DNA from: Octopus sinensis
Lineage: Eukaryota
DNA length: 64,000 nucleotides
Reading direction: 5' to 3'
Assembly: GCF_006345805.1 (NCBI RefSeq)
Contig: NC_043014.1
Coordinates: 6,572,001 to 6,636,000 of the forward strand
Part shown: positions 26,747 through 28,016 of the stretch, in pieces
Position numbering within the stretch: position 1 is the first letter of the stretch
Layout of the letters: every line of letters begins with the position of its first letter
Made by a program: the position numbers and the translations under genes
The notes under the pieces: generated by a model
Told to the model about the DNA's origin: nothing
Databases searched by the model: none
Seen by the model: the letters and a program-made list of their open reading frames with translations, nothing else

Positions 26747-26909
26747 ACGTATTTTTGCAATTTCAATATGGCTAACCCCTAAGGGTGGATGCTACTGTAG
26801 TTTTTAGCCCCAGGAGGACACACTCTCCTCCAGCTGGCCATAGACACACTTCTGTGTCCTGTCAGTATTTGCAAAGGGAAGTCATCCTTCCCGTCTTCAA
26901 CTTATGATA

Positions 26910-26954
26910 CACACGGACTCGAGTTTCGAGGTATTGACCTCTCGTCAGCGTGTG
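26910..26954 (-). ncRNA. Type I hammerhead ribozyme, canonical core
   Basis: Same sequence as 7841-7885. Confidence 0.93.
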
Positions 26955-27259
26955 ACAATCATAGTTGTCGCCGAGAATAGATTTCCTTCACAAATACTTA
27001 TACTTTTTCCAGCGCCCACTGTCGCTGATATTGAAAAAGTGAAATCAAACAATGATAATATTCAAAGTGAGTTTATACAGTAGCGGTAACACATCGTGAC
27101 ATATTTTTGCCATTTCAATATGGCTAACCCCTAAGGGTGGATGCTACTGTAGTTTTTAGCCCCAGGAGGACACACTCCTCCAGCTGGCCATAGACACAAC
27201 TATCTGTGTCCTGTCAGTATTTGCAAAGGGAAGTCATCCTTCCCGTCTTCATTATGATA

Positions 27260-27303
27260 CACACGGACTCGAGTTTCGAGTATTGACCTCTCGTCAGCGT
27301 GTG
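27260..27303 (-). ncRNA. Type I hammerhead ribozyme, 1-nt deletion in stem II
   Basis: Core intact. The + strand reads GAG instead of GAGG. Confidence 0.85.
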
Positions 27304-27611
27304 ACAATCATAGTTGTCGCCGAGAATTAGATTTCCTTCACAAATACTTATACTTTTTCCAGCGTCCACTGTCGCTGATATTGAAAAAGTGAAATCAAAC
27401 AATGATAAATATCAAAGTGAGTTATATACAGTAGCGGTCACATCGTGACGTATTTTTTTGCCATTTCAATATGGCTAACCCCTAAGGGTGGATGCTACTG
27501 TAGTTTTTAGCCCCAGGAGGACACACTCCTCCAGCTGGCCATAGACACACTATCTGTGTCCTGTCAGTATTTGCAAAGGGAAGTCATCCTTCCCGTCTTC
27601 AACTTATGATA

Positions 27612-27656
27612 CACACGGACTCGAGTTTCGAGGTATTGACCTCTCGTCAGCGTGTG
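27612..27656 (-). ncRNA. Type I hammerhead ribozyme, canonical core
   Basis: Same sequence as 7841-7885. Confidence 0.93.
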
Positions 27657-28016
27657 ACAATCATAGTTGTCGCCGAGAATTAGATTTCCTTCACAAATAC
27701 TTATACTTTTTCCAGCGTCCACTGTCGCTGATATTGAAAAAGTGAAATCAAACATGATAAATATCAAAGTGAGTTATATACAGTAGCGGTAACACATCGT
27801 GACGTATTTTTTTGCATTTCAATATGGCTAACCCCTAAGGGTGGATGCTACTGTAGTTTTTAGCCCCAGGAGGACACACTCCTCCATGGCCATAGACACA
27901 CTATCTGTGTCCTGTCAGTATTTGCAAAGGGAAGTCATCCTTCCCGTCTTCAACTTATGATACACACATATATATGTGTGCGTGTGTGTGTGTATAATGT
28001 GTGTGTTTTTACATCA

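What the first reader, a model, noticed from the sequence alone, without database searches (positions are those of the whole stretch)
26748..27967. Tandem 352-bp repeat with a canonical hammerhead ribozyme in every monomer: a retrozyme-like RNA element
Seen: about 3.5 near-identical monomers, with three complete hammerheads on the - strand at 350-352-bp spacing (CACACG-CUGACGA-GAGG UCAAUA CCUC-GAAAC UCGA GUC^CGUGUG). Stem I continues past a UGU/U bulge into CAACUAUGAU/AUCAUAGUUG, UUCUCGUC/GACGGGAA and UAUUUGUGAAGG/CCUUUGCAAAUA, making a long rod. The rest of the monomer is a series of hairpins with no credible ORF. Established: ribozyme-bearing tandem repeats (newt satellite 2, Schistosoma Sm-alpha, cave-cricket pDo500, metazoan non-LTR retrozymes) are transcribed as multimers, self-cleave to monomers and can circularise. 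Inference: this is a cephalopod member of that class, producing ~352-nt linear or circular RNAs. I cannot check whether it has been reported.
Basis: partly seen in the sequence, partly recalled or inferred. Interest (0 to 1): 0.92.

Follow-up and report, generated by a model that had tools for sequence, protein, structure and literature searches.

The report
Octopus hammerhead-ribozyme retrozyme tandem repeat
This 1.2-kb block is one recent insertion of a small non-coding mobile element (a "retrozyme"); each 353-base unit carries a self-cutting hammerhead RNA motif, a known kind of element that I did not find reported for cephalopods.

Summary
Window 26748-27967 is a 3.5-unit tandem repeat. 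It has three type I hammerhead motifs on the - strand; two are perfect and one has a 1-nt deletion in helix II.

It is not a local satellite. It is one insertion of a young family with a 353-nt consensus:
- 587 exact copies of the 45-nt ribozyme genome-wide, and at least 1381 candidate places.
- Sampled units differ from the consensus by about 0.8%.
- The unit is non-coding, 43% GC and strongly self-paired.
- Every sampled insertion lies in a (TA)n microsatellite.
- The 5' end varies. The 3' end is one of two fixed points, monomer position ~166-169 or ~209-213.
- In 16 of 16 head-to-head insertions one arm has the short end and the other the long end.

This matches the tandem/inverted, one-sided "tail", (TA)n-seeking signature described for Penelope-like elements. 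It therefore fits the metazoan non-LTR retrozyme class.

RNA evidence is weak. Two runs that are RNA only by guess each hold a closed 353-nt cycle contig. Cleavage, circles and the mobilising enzyme are inferred. No partner Penelope-like element was found among 38 sampled loci.

The scan has already reported this class, and apparently this ~354-bp family, on other DNA of this genome. Verdict: a new member of a known kind, of moderate interest.

The parts
26748..27967 (-). Whole insertion: a single-arm tandem array of 3.46 units of the 353-nt family
   Evidence: TRF; monomer alignment; BLAST map against the monomer
27612..27656 (-). Hammerhead 1, perfect: helix I CACACG/CGUGUG, core CUGACGA...GAAA, helix II GAGG/CCUC with a 6-nt loop, helix III AC/GU around UCGA. 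Predicted cut between 27618 and 27617.
   Evidence: Rfam RF00163 32.2 bits, E 1e-5; sequence
27260..27303 (-). Hammerhead 2, with a 1-nt deletion in the 3' strand of helix II (3 bp left). Predicted cut between 27266 and 27265.
   Evidence: Rfam 29.7 bits; alignment
26910..26954 (-). Hammerhead 3, perfect. Predicted cut between 26916 and 26915.
   Evidence: Rfam 32.2 bits
27266..27617 (-). Predicted 352-nt RNA monomer between two cleavage sites. The second such monomer is 26916-27265 (350 nt).
   Evidence: Cleavage sites inferred from the hammerhead geometry; not tested experimentally
27506..27586 (-). Conserved ~80-nt module downstream of the ribozyme (monomer positions 25-105: two hairpins), shared with a second, older hammerhead family
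   Evidence: 72% identity over 82 nt, E 2e-6, with compensatory pairs; highest contig depth falls in parts of this and the adjoining stretch
26748..26915 (-). 3'-terminal partial unit, ending at the family's fixed 'short' terminus (...AAAUACGU, monomer position ~163) directly on (TA)n
   Evidence: Junction table; 228 exact junctions of this type genome-wide
27961..27967 (-). 5' end of the array: homology starts at position +2 after a would-be cleavage site (GUGUGUA...), next to a (CA)n/(TA)n tract
   Evidence: A single case; no enrichment of such ends in the family.
26083..26746 (.). (TA)n microsatellite, the target into which the element inserted. A shorter CA/TA tract lies on the other side at 27968-28020.
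   Evidence: TRF; sequence; GC 14-16%

Best explanation
The block is one young insertion of a 353-nt non-autonomous, non-coding retroelement of the metazoan 'non-LTR retrozyme' kind.

Proposed cycle:
1. An array is transcribed as a multimer.
2. The type I hammerheads cut after GUC. They probably pair two by two through their palindromic helix III (ACUCGAGU) as double hammerheads.
3. This releases 353-nt monomers with 5'-OH and 2',3'-cyclic phosphate ends.
4. A host tRNA ligase (RtcB type) closes the monomers into highly paired circles.
5. A reverse transcriptase of a Penelope-like element (RT plus GIY-YIG nuclease) nicks a (TA)n microsatellite and primes cDNA at a fixed point of the RNA, about position 166.
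6. It runs round the circle (or along a multimer) one to several times and stops at a variable place. It often also lays down an inverted second arm that reaches about 44 nt further, to position 209-213.

Shown here: the motif, the tandem units, the dispersal and youth of the family, the fixed 3' ends, the (TA)n target, and the rule of one short and one long end.

Inferred: cleavage, circularisation, and the identity of the enzyme.
For: Ribozyme:
- All core positions are present: C3 U4 G5 A6 N7 G8 A9, G12 A13 A14, A15.1-U16.1, C17, and the G10.1-C11.1 pair. Helix I has 6 bp followed by an internal loop; helix II has 4 bp plus a 6-nt loop.
- Helix III stays palindromic in diverged relatives through paired changes: ACUCGAGU, ACCCGGGU and ACUAGU.
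- A two-molecule fold forms the 8-bp shared helix III: -65.3 kcal/mol against 2 x -30.2.

Family:
- 587 exact 45-nt ribozymes, 289 on + and 298 on -, with 0 for the reversed control.
- At least 1381 first-look candidates at 94-100% identity on many chromosomes.
- 51 full units from 26 loci differ from the consensus by 0.8%; 42 of 51 ribozymes are exact.

Insertion signature:
- All sampled 3' ends are at position ~166-169 or ~209-213, and nearly all abut (TA)n.
- Genome-wide there are 228 exact short-end junctions and about 180 long-end junctions, with 0 for reversed controls.
- 5' ends are scattered.
- In 16 of 16 head-to-head pairs one arm is short and one long; P about 7e-6 if arms were independent.
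- Craig et al. 2021 (PMC8557442) describe exactly this for Penelope-like elements: 5' truncation, partial tandems, an adjacent inverted copy, a 30-40-bp tail at one end, and a (TA)n preference.

Possible enzymes: intact 781-aa RT + GIY-YIG frames exist in many copies.

RNA hint: in runs X1 and X2 one 383-nt contig closes on itself with period 353 (k-1 overlap of 30), at depth 24 and 139. The whole-genome run X15 gives only fragments of at most 89 nt.

Class features are taken from Cervera and de la Pena 2020 (PMC7229834).
Against: - No experiment or raw-read evidence shows cleavage or circles. X1 and X2 are RNA only by the tool's guess, and a cycle contig arises equally from tandem DNA or from multimeric RNA.
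- The ribozymes score just below Rfam's gathering cut-off.
- Helix III is only 2 bp in cis.
- 38 sampled Penelope-like loci contain no hammerhead, and none carries the monomer or its module as part of the element's own sequence; the only matches are stray copies or weak module hits (L057, L066, L047, L067) beside or outside the element's reading frame. The mobilising partner is therefore unidentified.
- 5' ends of arrays are not enriched at the cleavage site. The genomic copies therefore give no fossil record of cleaved templates.
- The sampled loci are the best-scoring ones, so the youth of the family is overestimated.
Confidence: 0.8

Rival explanations
1. It is an ordinary satellite or tandem duplication, spread and homogenised at the DNA level by unequal crossing-over or segmental duplication. 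The hammerhead would be an inert fossil.
For: It is a tandem repeat, and newt satellite 2 was first described this way. Cleavage was not tested. Cycle contigs are also produced by tandem DNA.
Against: There are hundreds of short arrays (0.6-7 units) on many chromosomes. Each has the same two 3' termini and lies in a (TA)n tract, with variable 5' ends and inverted partners. DNA-level duplication would carry flanking sequence along and would not give fixed ends. 42 of 51 ribozymes are exact.
Confidence: 0.05
2. The unit is not an independent element. It is the terminal (pseudo-LTR) piece of an autonomous Penelope-like element, seen here as 5'-truncated copies.
For: The insertion architecture is that of Penelope-like elements (PMC8557442). 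Hammerheads sit in their pseudo-LTRs. Earlier notes of this scan describe Penelope tails with minimal hammerheads in this genome. A 2026 preprint derives retrozymes from pseudo-LTRs.
Against: Arrays run round the 353-nt unit up to 7 times with no other sequence between units, and end directly in microsatellite. No reading frame adjoins any of 30 loci. 38 loci with Penelope-type GIY-YIG/RT frames contain no hammerhead and do not carry the monomer as part of the element itself; only stray copies or weak module hits lie beside some of them.
Confidence: 0.07
3. Copies spread through extrachromosomal circular DNA, by rolling-circle replication of a 353-bp DNA circle followed by re-integration, without an RNA intermediate.
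For: Tandem arrays with permuted ends are what rolling-circle copying of a circle gives. Nothing here shows directly that the template was RNA.
Against: A strictly fixed 3' end with a variable 5' end is the polarity of target-primed reverse transcription, not of random breakage of DNA circles. So are the inverted arm, the one-sided 44-nt tail and the (TA)n targeting (PMC8557442). A conserved self-cleaving RNA motif also has no role in a DNA-only cycle.
Confidence: 0.05

Closest known systems
Metazoan non-LTR retrozymes (Cervera and de la Pena 2020, PMC7229834), e.g. the ~350-nt units of the mussel Mytilus galloprovincialis and Rtz_353 of the axolotl
   Same: A type I hammerhead in every unit of a short tandem repeat (150-450 bp). 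No ORF, LTR, PBS or PPT. GC below 45%. A highly self-paired monomer. Many dispersed copies. [quoted passage not shown]
   Different: The host is a cephalopod, for which I found no report. The sequence is unrelated. Circular RNA is not demonstrated here. This family adds defined 3' termini, strict (TA)n targeting and a rule of one short and one long end, which I did not find described for retrozymes.
Penelope-like elements with GIY-YIG nuclease (Craig et al. 2021, PMC8557442)
   Same: Insertion form: 5' truncation, partial tandems, an adjacent inverted 5'-truncated copy, a 30-40-bp tail at only one end, and a preference for (TA)n. Canonical clades carry hammerheads in their pseudo-LTRs.
   Different: There is no RT or nuclease frame, the unit is only 353 nt, and it has no sequence similarity to the Penelope-like copies sampled in this genome. 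It would be a passenger of their machinery, not a member.
Newt satellite 2 and the cave-cricket pDo500 and Schistosoma Sm-alpha hammerhead repeats
   Same: Genomic repeats with a type I hammerhead that has a weak helix III capped by a palindromic loop, thought to work as a dimer in multimeric transcripts.
   Different: Those were described as satellites or SINE-like repeats before the retrozyme concept. The element here forms short arrays at hundreds of microsatellite sites, not long blocks.
Plant LTR retrozymes (Cervera et al. 2016, PMC4918200)
   Same: Non-autonomous and non-coding, with hammerhead-delimited RNA that circularises and is thought to be the template for reverse transcription.
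   Different: Plant elements carry type III hammerheads in true LTRs, PBS/PPT, 4-bp target duplications, 600-1000 nt, high GC, and Gypsy partners. None of these applies here.

Membership tests
Hammerhead ribozyme, type I (Rfam RF00163) | Conserved catalytic core: CUGANGA, GAAA, the A15.1-U16.1 pair, cleavage triplet NUH, and the G10.1-C11.1 pair | tested here: met
   CUGACGA ... GAAA ... GUC, with helix II starting G and ending C, in all three copies
Hammerhead ribozyme, type I (Rfam RF00163) | Three helices around the core, with helix I open (type I) | tested here: met
   Helix I has 6 bp and continues as a rod. Helix II has 4 bp (3 bp in the middle copy). Helix III has 2 bp plus the UCGA loop, or 8 bp between two molecules.
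Hammerhead ribozyme, type I (Rfam RF00163) | Score at or above Rfam's gathering cut-off (34 bits) | tested here: not met
   32.2, 32.2 and 29.7 bits, E 1e-5 to 7e-5. The shortfall comes from the helix II sequence, not the core.
Hammerhead ribozyme, type I (Rfam RF00163) | Self-cleavage after H17 | not testable with these tools
   Needs in vitro transcription of a monomer and a dimer
Metazoan non-LTR retrozyme | Type I hammerhead inside short tandem repeats of 150-450 bp, from dimers to multimers | tested here: met
   353-nt unit; 3.5 units here and 0.6-7 units at other loci
Metazoan non-LTR retrozyme | Non-coding; no LTR, PBS or PPT; GC below 45-50% | tested here: met
   Longest frame 80 aa in a trimer; GC 42.8%; arrays flanked directly by microsatellite
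Metazoan non-LTR retrozyme | Many dispersed genomic copies (a mobile family) | tested here: met
   587 exact ribozymes; at least 1381 candidate places; about 400 exact end junctions
Metazoan non-LTR retrozyme | Highly self-paired monomer RNA | tested here: met
   z = -4.5 against shuffles; 63% of bases paired. A copy at 88% identity keeps 13 of 19 changed pairs, which is weak support.
Metazoan non-LTR retrozyme | Expressed as linear and circular RNA of monomer size | tested here: inconclusive
   Closed 353-nt cycle contigs in two runs that are RNA by guess only. Contigs cannot show ends, strand or circularity.
Penelope-like element (autonomous) | Single ORF with PLE-type RT and GIY-YIG nuclease | tested here: not met
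   No ORF in or next to the arrays. Such ORFs exist elsewhere in the genome but do not carry the monomer as part of their own sequence; only stray copies or weak module hits lie beside some of them.
Penelope-like element (insertion signature only) | Partial tandems, inverted 5'-truncated partner, 30-40-bp tail at one end, (TA)n preference | tested here: met
   In 16 of 16 inverted pairs one end is 41-47 nt longer than the other.
Classical satellite DNA | Long homogeneous arrays at few loci, spread by DNA-level recombination | tested here: not met
   Short arrays at hundreds of sites with identical termini
tRNA-derived SINE | Pol III tRNA-like head | tested here: not met
   ARAGORN finds no tRNA in 24000-31000 and Rfam reports no tRNA hit in the array

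The most novel reading that the evidence does not exclude
The two fixed 3' termini, 41-47 nt apart and always one of each in head-to-head insertions, record the integration mechanism of Penelope-type reverse transcriptases on a circular RNA template. The 'tail' seen at one end of Penelope-like insertions would then simply be templated read-on past the normal priming point, when the second DNA end is primed. If so, this very homogeneous, short family would be a natural reporter for the still unsolved Penelope integration pathway, and direct genomic evidence that retrozymes are copied from circles.
Probability: 0.3. Interest if true: 0.6.

Novelty: new member of a known kind. Interest (0 to 1): 0.38.

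Why it matters
Hammerhead-bearing tandem repeats that make small circular RNAs are a recently recognised class of animal mobile element. How they are copied is still argued from indirect evidence. A very young, uniform family in an octopus genome extends the class to cephalopods. Its sharply defined insertion ends, strict (TA)n targeting and fixed pairing of a short and a long end give clean junctions, from which the priming site and the link to Penelope-like reverse transcriptases can be tested. For genome annotation, it explains a recurrent repeat that default ribozyme scans miss because it scores just under the Rfam cut-off.

Tried and rejected
- Default Rfam scan of the window: blank, because the motif scores 1.8 bits under the cut-off. 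It is found with the E-value threshold.
- Search for the autonomous partner. 30 loci around GIY-YIG hits and 8 stretches of 9.5 kb around intact 762-883-aa frames gave no hammerhead by regex or Rfam. The only BLAST matches to the monomer were incidental retrozyme copies beside L057 and L066. An nhmmer profile of ribozyme plus module gave only those and two weak stray hits. The second family (fam2) gave nothing. The 1.15-kb direct repeat in L063 ends in a widespread SINE-like sequence, so it is not a clean pseudo-LTR.
- Fossil evidence of cleaved templates. 5' ends of 41 arms are scattered, and only this window's array starts next to the cleavage site. About 0.35 such cases are expected by chance, so this is not significant.
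- Covariation in the rod. One copy at 88% identity keeps 13 of 19 changed pairs, but 12 of these are one-sided G-U changes, so the support is weak.
The structure of the second family and orthologous empty sites were therefore not examined.
- RNA runs: none is on record as RNA and all are contigs, so starts, ends, strand and circularity could not be read.
- Literature: no paper in the library combines octopus or cephalopod with retrozymes or genomic hammerheads, apart from a Penelope survey that does not describe this element.

Full report
**1. What is in the sequence**

Window 26748-27967 is a tandem repeat of 3.5 units: period 351, 96% matches. On the - strand each of the three complete units ends in a hammerhead motif. 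The parts are:
- helix I: CACACG / CGUGUG
- core: CUGACGA
- helix II: GAGG / CCUC, closed by UCAAUA
- GAAA
- helix III: AC / GU around UCGA
- cleavage triplet: GUC

All conserved core positions are present.

Against Rfam Hammerhead_1 the copies score 32.2, 29.7 and 32.2 bits (E 1e-5 to 7e-5). The gathering score is 34, which is why the default scan was blank. A simple core pattern gives 5 matches in the window against 0.02 expected.

The middle copy lacks one C in helix II. Most differences between units are 1-2-nt indels. In a long-read assembly these may partly be errors.

Helix I continues into a long imperfect rod, and the rest of the unit forms hairpins. One unit folds at -109.8 kcal/mol, z = -4.5 against shuffles. 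There is no ORF. The array sits between a 664-bp (TA)n tract and a short CA/TA tract.

**2. It is one insertion of a genome-wide family**

The assembly has 2.72 Gb in 13,516 contigs, the size published for Octopus sinensis. This is consistent with that species but not proof. The family looks like this:
- The monomer finds at least 1381 candidate places. The scored ones are 94-100% identical and lie on many chromosomes.
- The exact 45-nt ribozyme occurs 587 times, 289 on + and 298 on -. The reversed control occurs 0 times.
- I took 51 full units from 26 loci. The consensus is 353 nt and 42.8% GC, and mean divergence from it is 0.8%. 42 of the 51 ribozymes are exact. These loci are the best-scoring ones, so the age is biased towards young.
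- A second insertion of the family lies in the window at 7673-8400.

**3. Insertion anatomy**

I mapped the monomer on 30 loci plus the two window loci.
- Arrays are 0.6 to 7 units long.
- The 3' end on the ribozyme strand is always one of two points. The 'short' end is ...AAAUACGUCAC, monomer position ~166-169. The 'long' end is ...UUUAUCAU(UGUU), position 209-213.
- Almost every end runs straight into (TA)n.
- Genome-wide there are 228 exact short-end/(TA)n junctions and about 180 distinct long-end junctions. Reversed controls give 0.
- 5' ends are scattered over the whole unit.
- About half of the insertions are head-to-head pairs whose 5' ends meet in the middle.
- In 16 of 16 such pairs one arm has the short end and the other the long end. 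If arms chose independently, P is about 7e-6. More such pairs are visible in the genome-wide lists.
- 10 of 11 single arms, including this window's array, have the short end.

The literature describes this pattern for Penelope-like elements. The shared features are 5' truncation, partial tandems, an adjacent inverted truncated copy, a 30-40-bp tail at only one end, and a preference for (TA)n (PMC8557442).

The fixed 3' end is not the ribozyme cut site. The template therefore ran through that site, which means it was a circle or a multimer.

**4. The ribozyme probably works in pairs**

In cis, helix III is only two base pairs plus a tetraloop. However, ACUCGAGU is a perfect palindrome. A diverged copy (L057) has ACCCGGGU, and a second family in the window has ACUAGU. 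The palindrome is thus kept through paired changes.

A two-molecule fold of the ribozyme region forms both hammerheads around a shared 8-bp helix III: -65.3 kcal/mol against 2 x -30.2. Double hammerheads are established for newt and axolotl repeats. Invertebrate motifs with a two-pair helix III cleave well in vitro (PMC7229834).

**5. A conserved module**

At 39750-39970 (- strand) the window holds a copy of a second, older family. Units are about 220 bp, copies are 90-93% alike, there are at least 3596 candidate places, and copies are mostly single. It carries a minimal hammerhead.

It shares an 82-nt stretch just downstream of the ribozyme with the 353-nt family: 72% identity, E 2e-6. In one hairpin, two of six pairs change on both sides (GGAGGA/UCCUCC against GGAAGC/GCUUCC).

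Contig depth in all runs peaks in two stretches: one inside this module and one just downstream of it, about monomer positions 27-56 and 99-134. This fits sequence shared by several families. The module lies between the cut site and the 3' terminus, where a reverse transcriptase would be expected to recognise its template. That role is inference.

**6. RNA**

No listed run is on record as RNA. Runs X1 and X2 are small enough to look like transcriptomes, but they are RNA by the tool's guess only. In each, one 383-nt contig maps as 'goes back 353'. That is a closed 353-nt cycle plus the 30-nt overlap, with 0-1 substitutions, at depth 24 and 139.

The whole-genome run X15 yields only fragments of at most 89 nt, because its many copies differ. 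A clean isolated cycle is what a dominant circular or multimeric RNA would give. Tandem DNA could give it too, so I count it as a hint only.

**7. The enzyme**

The genome has at least 5029 GIY-YIG candidate places. [quoted passage not shown]

In 38 such loci I found no hammerhead. None carries the monomer or its module as part of the element's own sequence; the only matches were stray retrozyme copies beside L057 and L066 and two weak module hits in L047 and L067. The partner is not identified, and the link rests on the insertion signature alone.

**8. Comparison and verdict**

The element meets every sequence-level criterion of metazoan non-LTR retrozymes (PMC7229834). It shows the insertion scars expected if these are passengers of Penelope-like elements, as a 2026 preprint argues for vertebrates (10.64898/2026.07.22.740005).

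It is not a Penelope-like element itself, not a classical satellite, and not a tRNA-type SINE.

I found no report of genomic hammerheads or retrozymes in cephalopods. This scan has already noted the class many times in this genome, including a ~354-bp unit that is probably this family.

It is a new member of a known kind. The points that may be new are the strict pairing of a short and a long end and the sharply defined priming points.

Noticed in passing
window 7673-8400: A second insertion of the same 353-nt family, about 19 kb away. It is a head-to-head pair. The - arm (7673-8104) has one intact hammerhead at 7847-7879 and the short 3' end. The + arm (8107-8398) has the long 3' end. Both arms abut (TA)n.
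   Followed up: yes
window 39750-39970 (- strand): A copy of a different, older hammerhead-bearing repeat: about 220 bp, minimal hammerhead CUGAUGA...GAAAC UA GUC at 39926-39956, at least 3596 candidate places genome-wide at 90-93% identity, mostly single copies with fixed ends. It shares an ~80-nt hairpin module with the 353-nt family. Earlier scan notes suggest such units may be Penelope-element tails; I could not confirm this.
   Followed up: partly
L063 (contig 1, 207473000-207482500) and L061-L068: Apparently intact Penelope-like ORFs: 781 aa with RVT_1 plus a C-terminal GIY-YIG domain, preceded by an overlapping 320-479-aa frame. They are present in many near-identical copies, so this element class may still be active in the genome. 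No hammerhead was detected within 9.5 kb.
   Followed up: partly
L063 6840-7065 and 8843-9062; window 28020-28200: Abundant SINE-like repeats. One has a conserved GGCGUUAGGAAGGGCAUCCAGC-type core and ends in (ATG)n/(TA)n. A tRNA-like remnant lies just upstream of the array on the opposite strand. Several other SINE copies are scattered through the window (repeat families D10-D19).
   Followed up: no
window 20700-22600 and 54780-55160: Long (AAT/AAC)n-type microsatellite blocks that create spurious 600-aa 'ORFs'. The window as a whole is very rich in (TA)n and (CA)n tracts, the target of these elements.
   Followed up: no
window 34511-35461: Another tandem repeat of about 254 bp, four copies, 61-93% alike (family D17). 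Not examined for ribozymes beyond the window-wide pattern search, which found none there.
   Followed up: no
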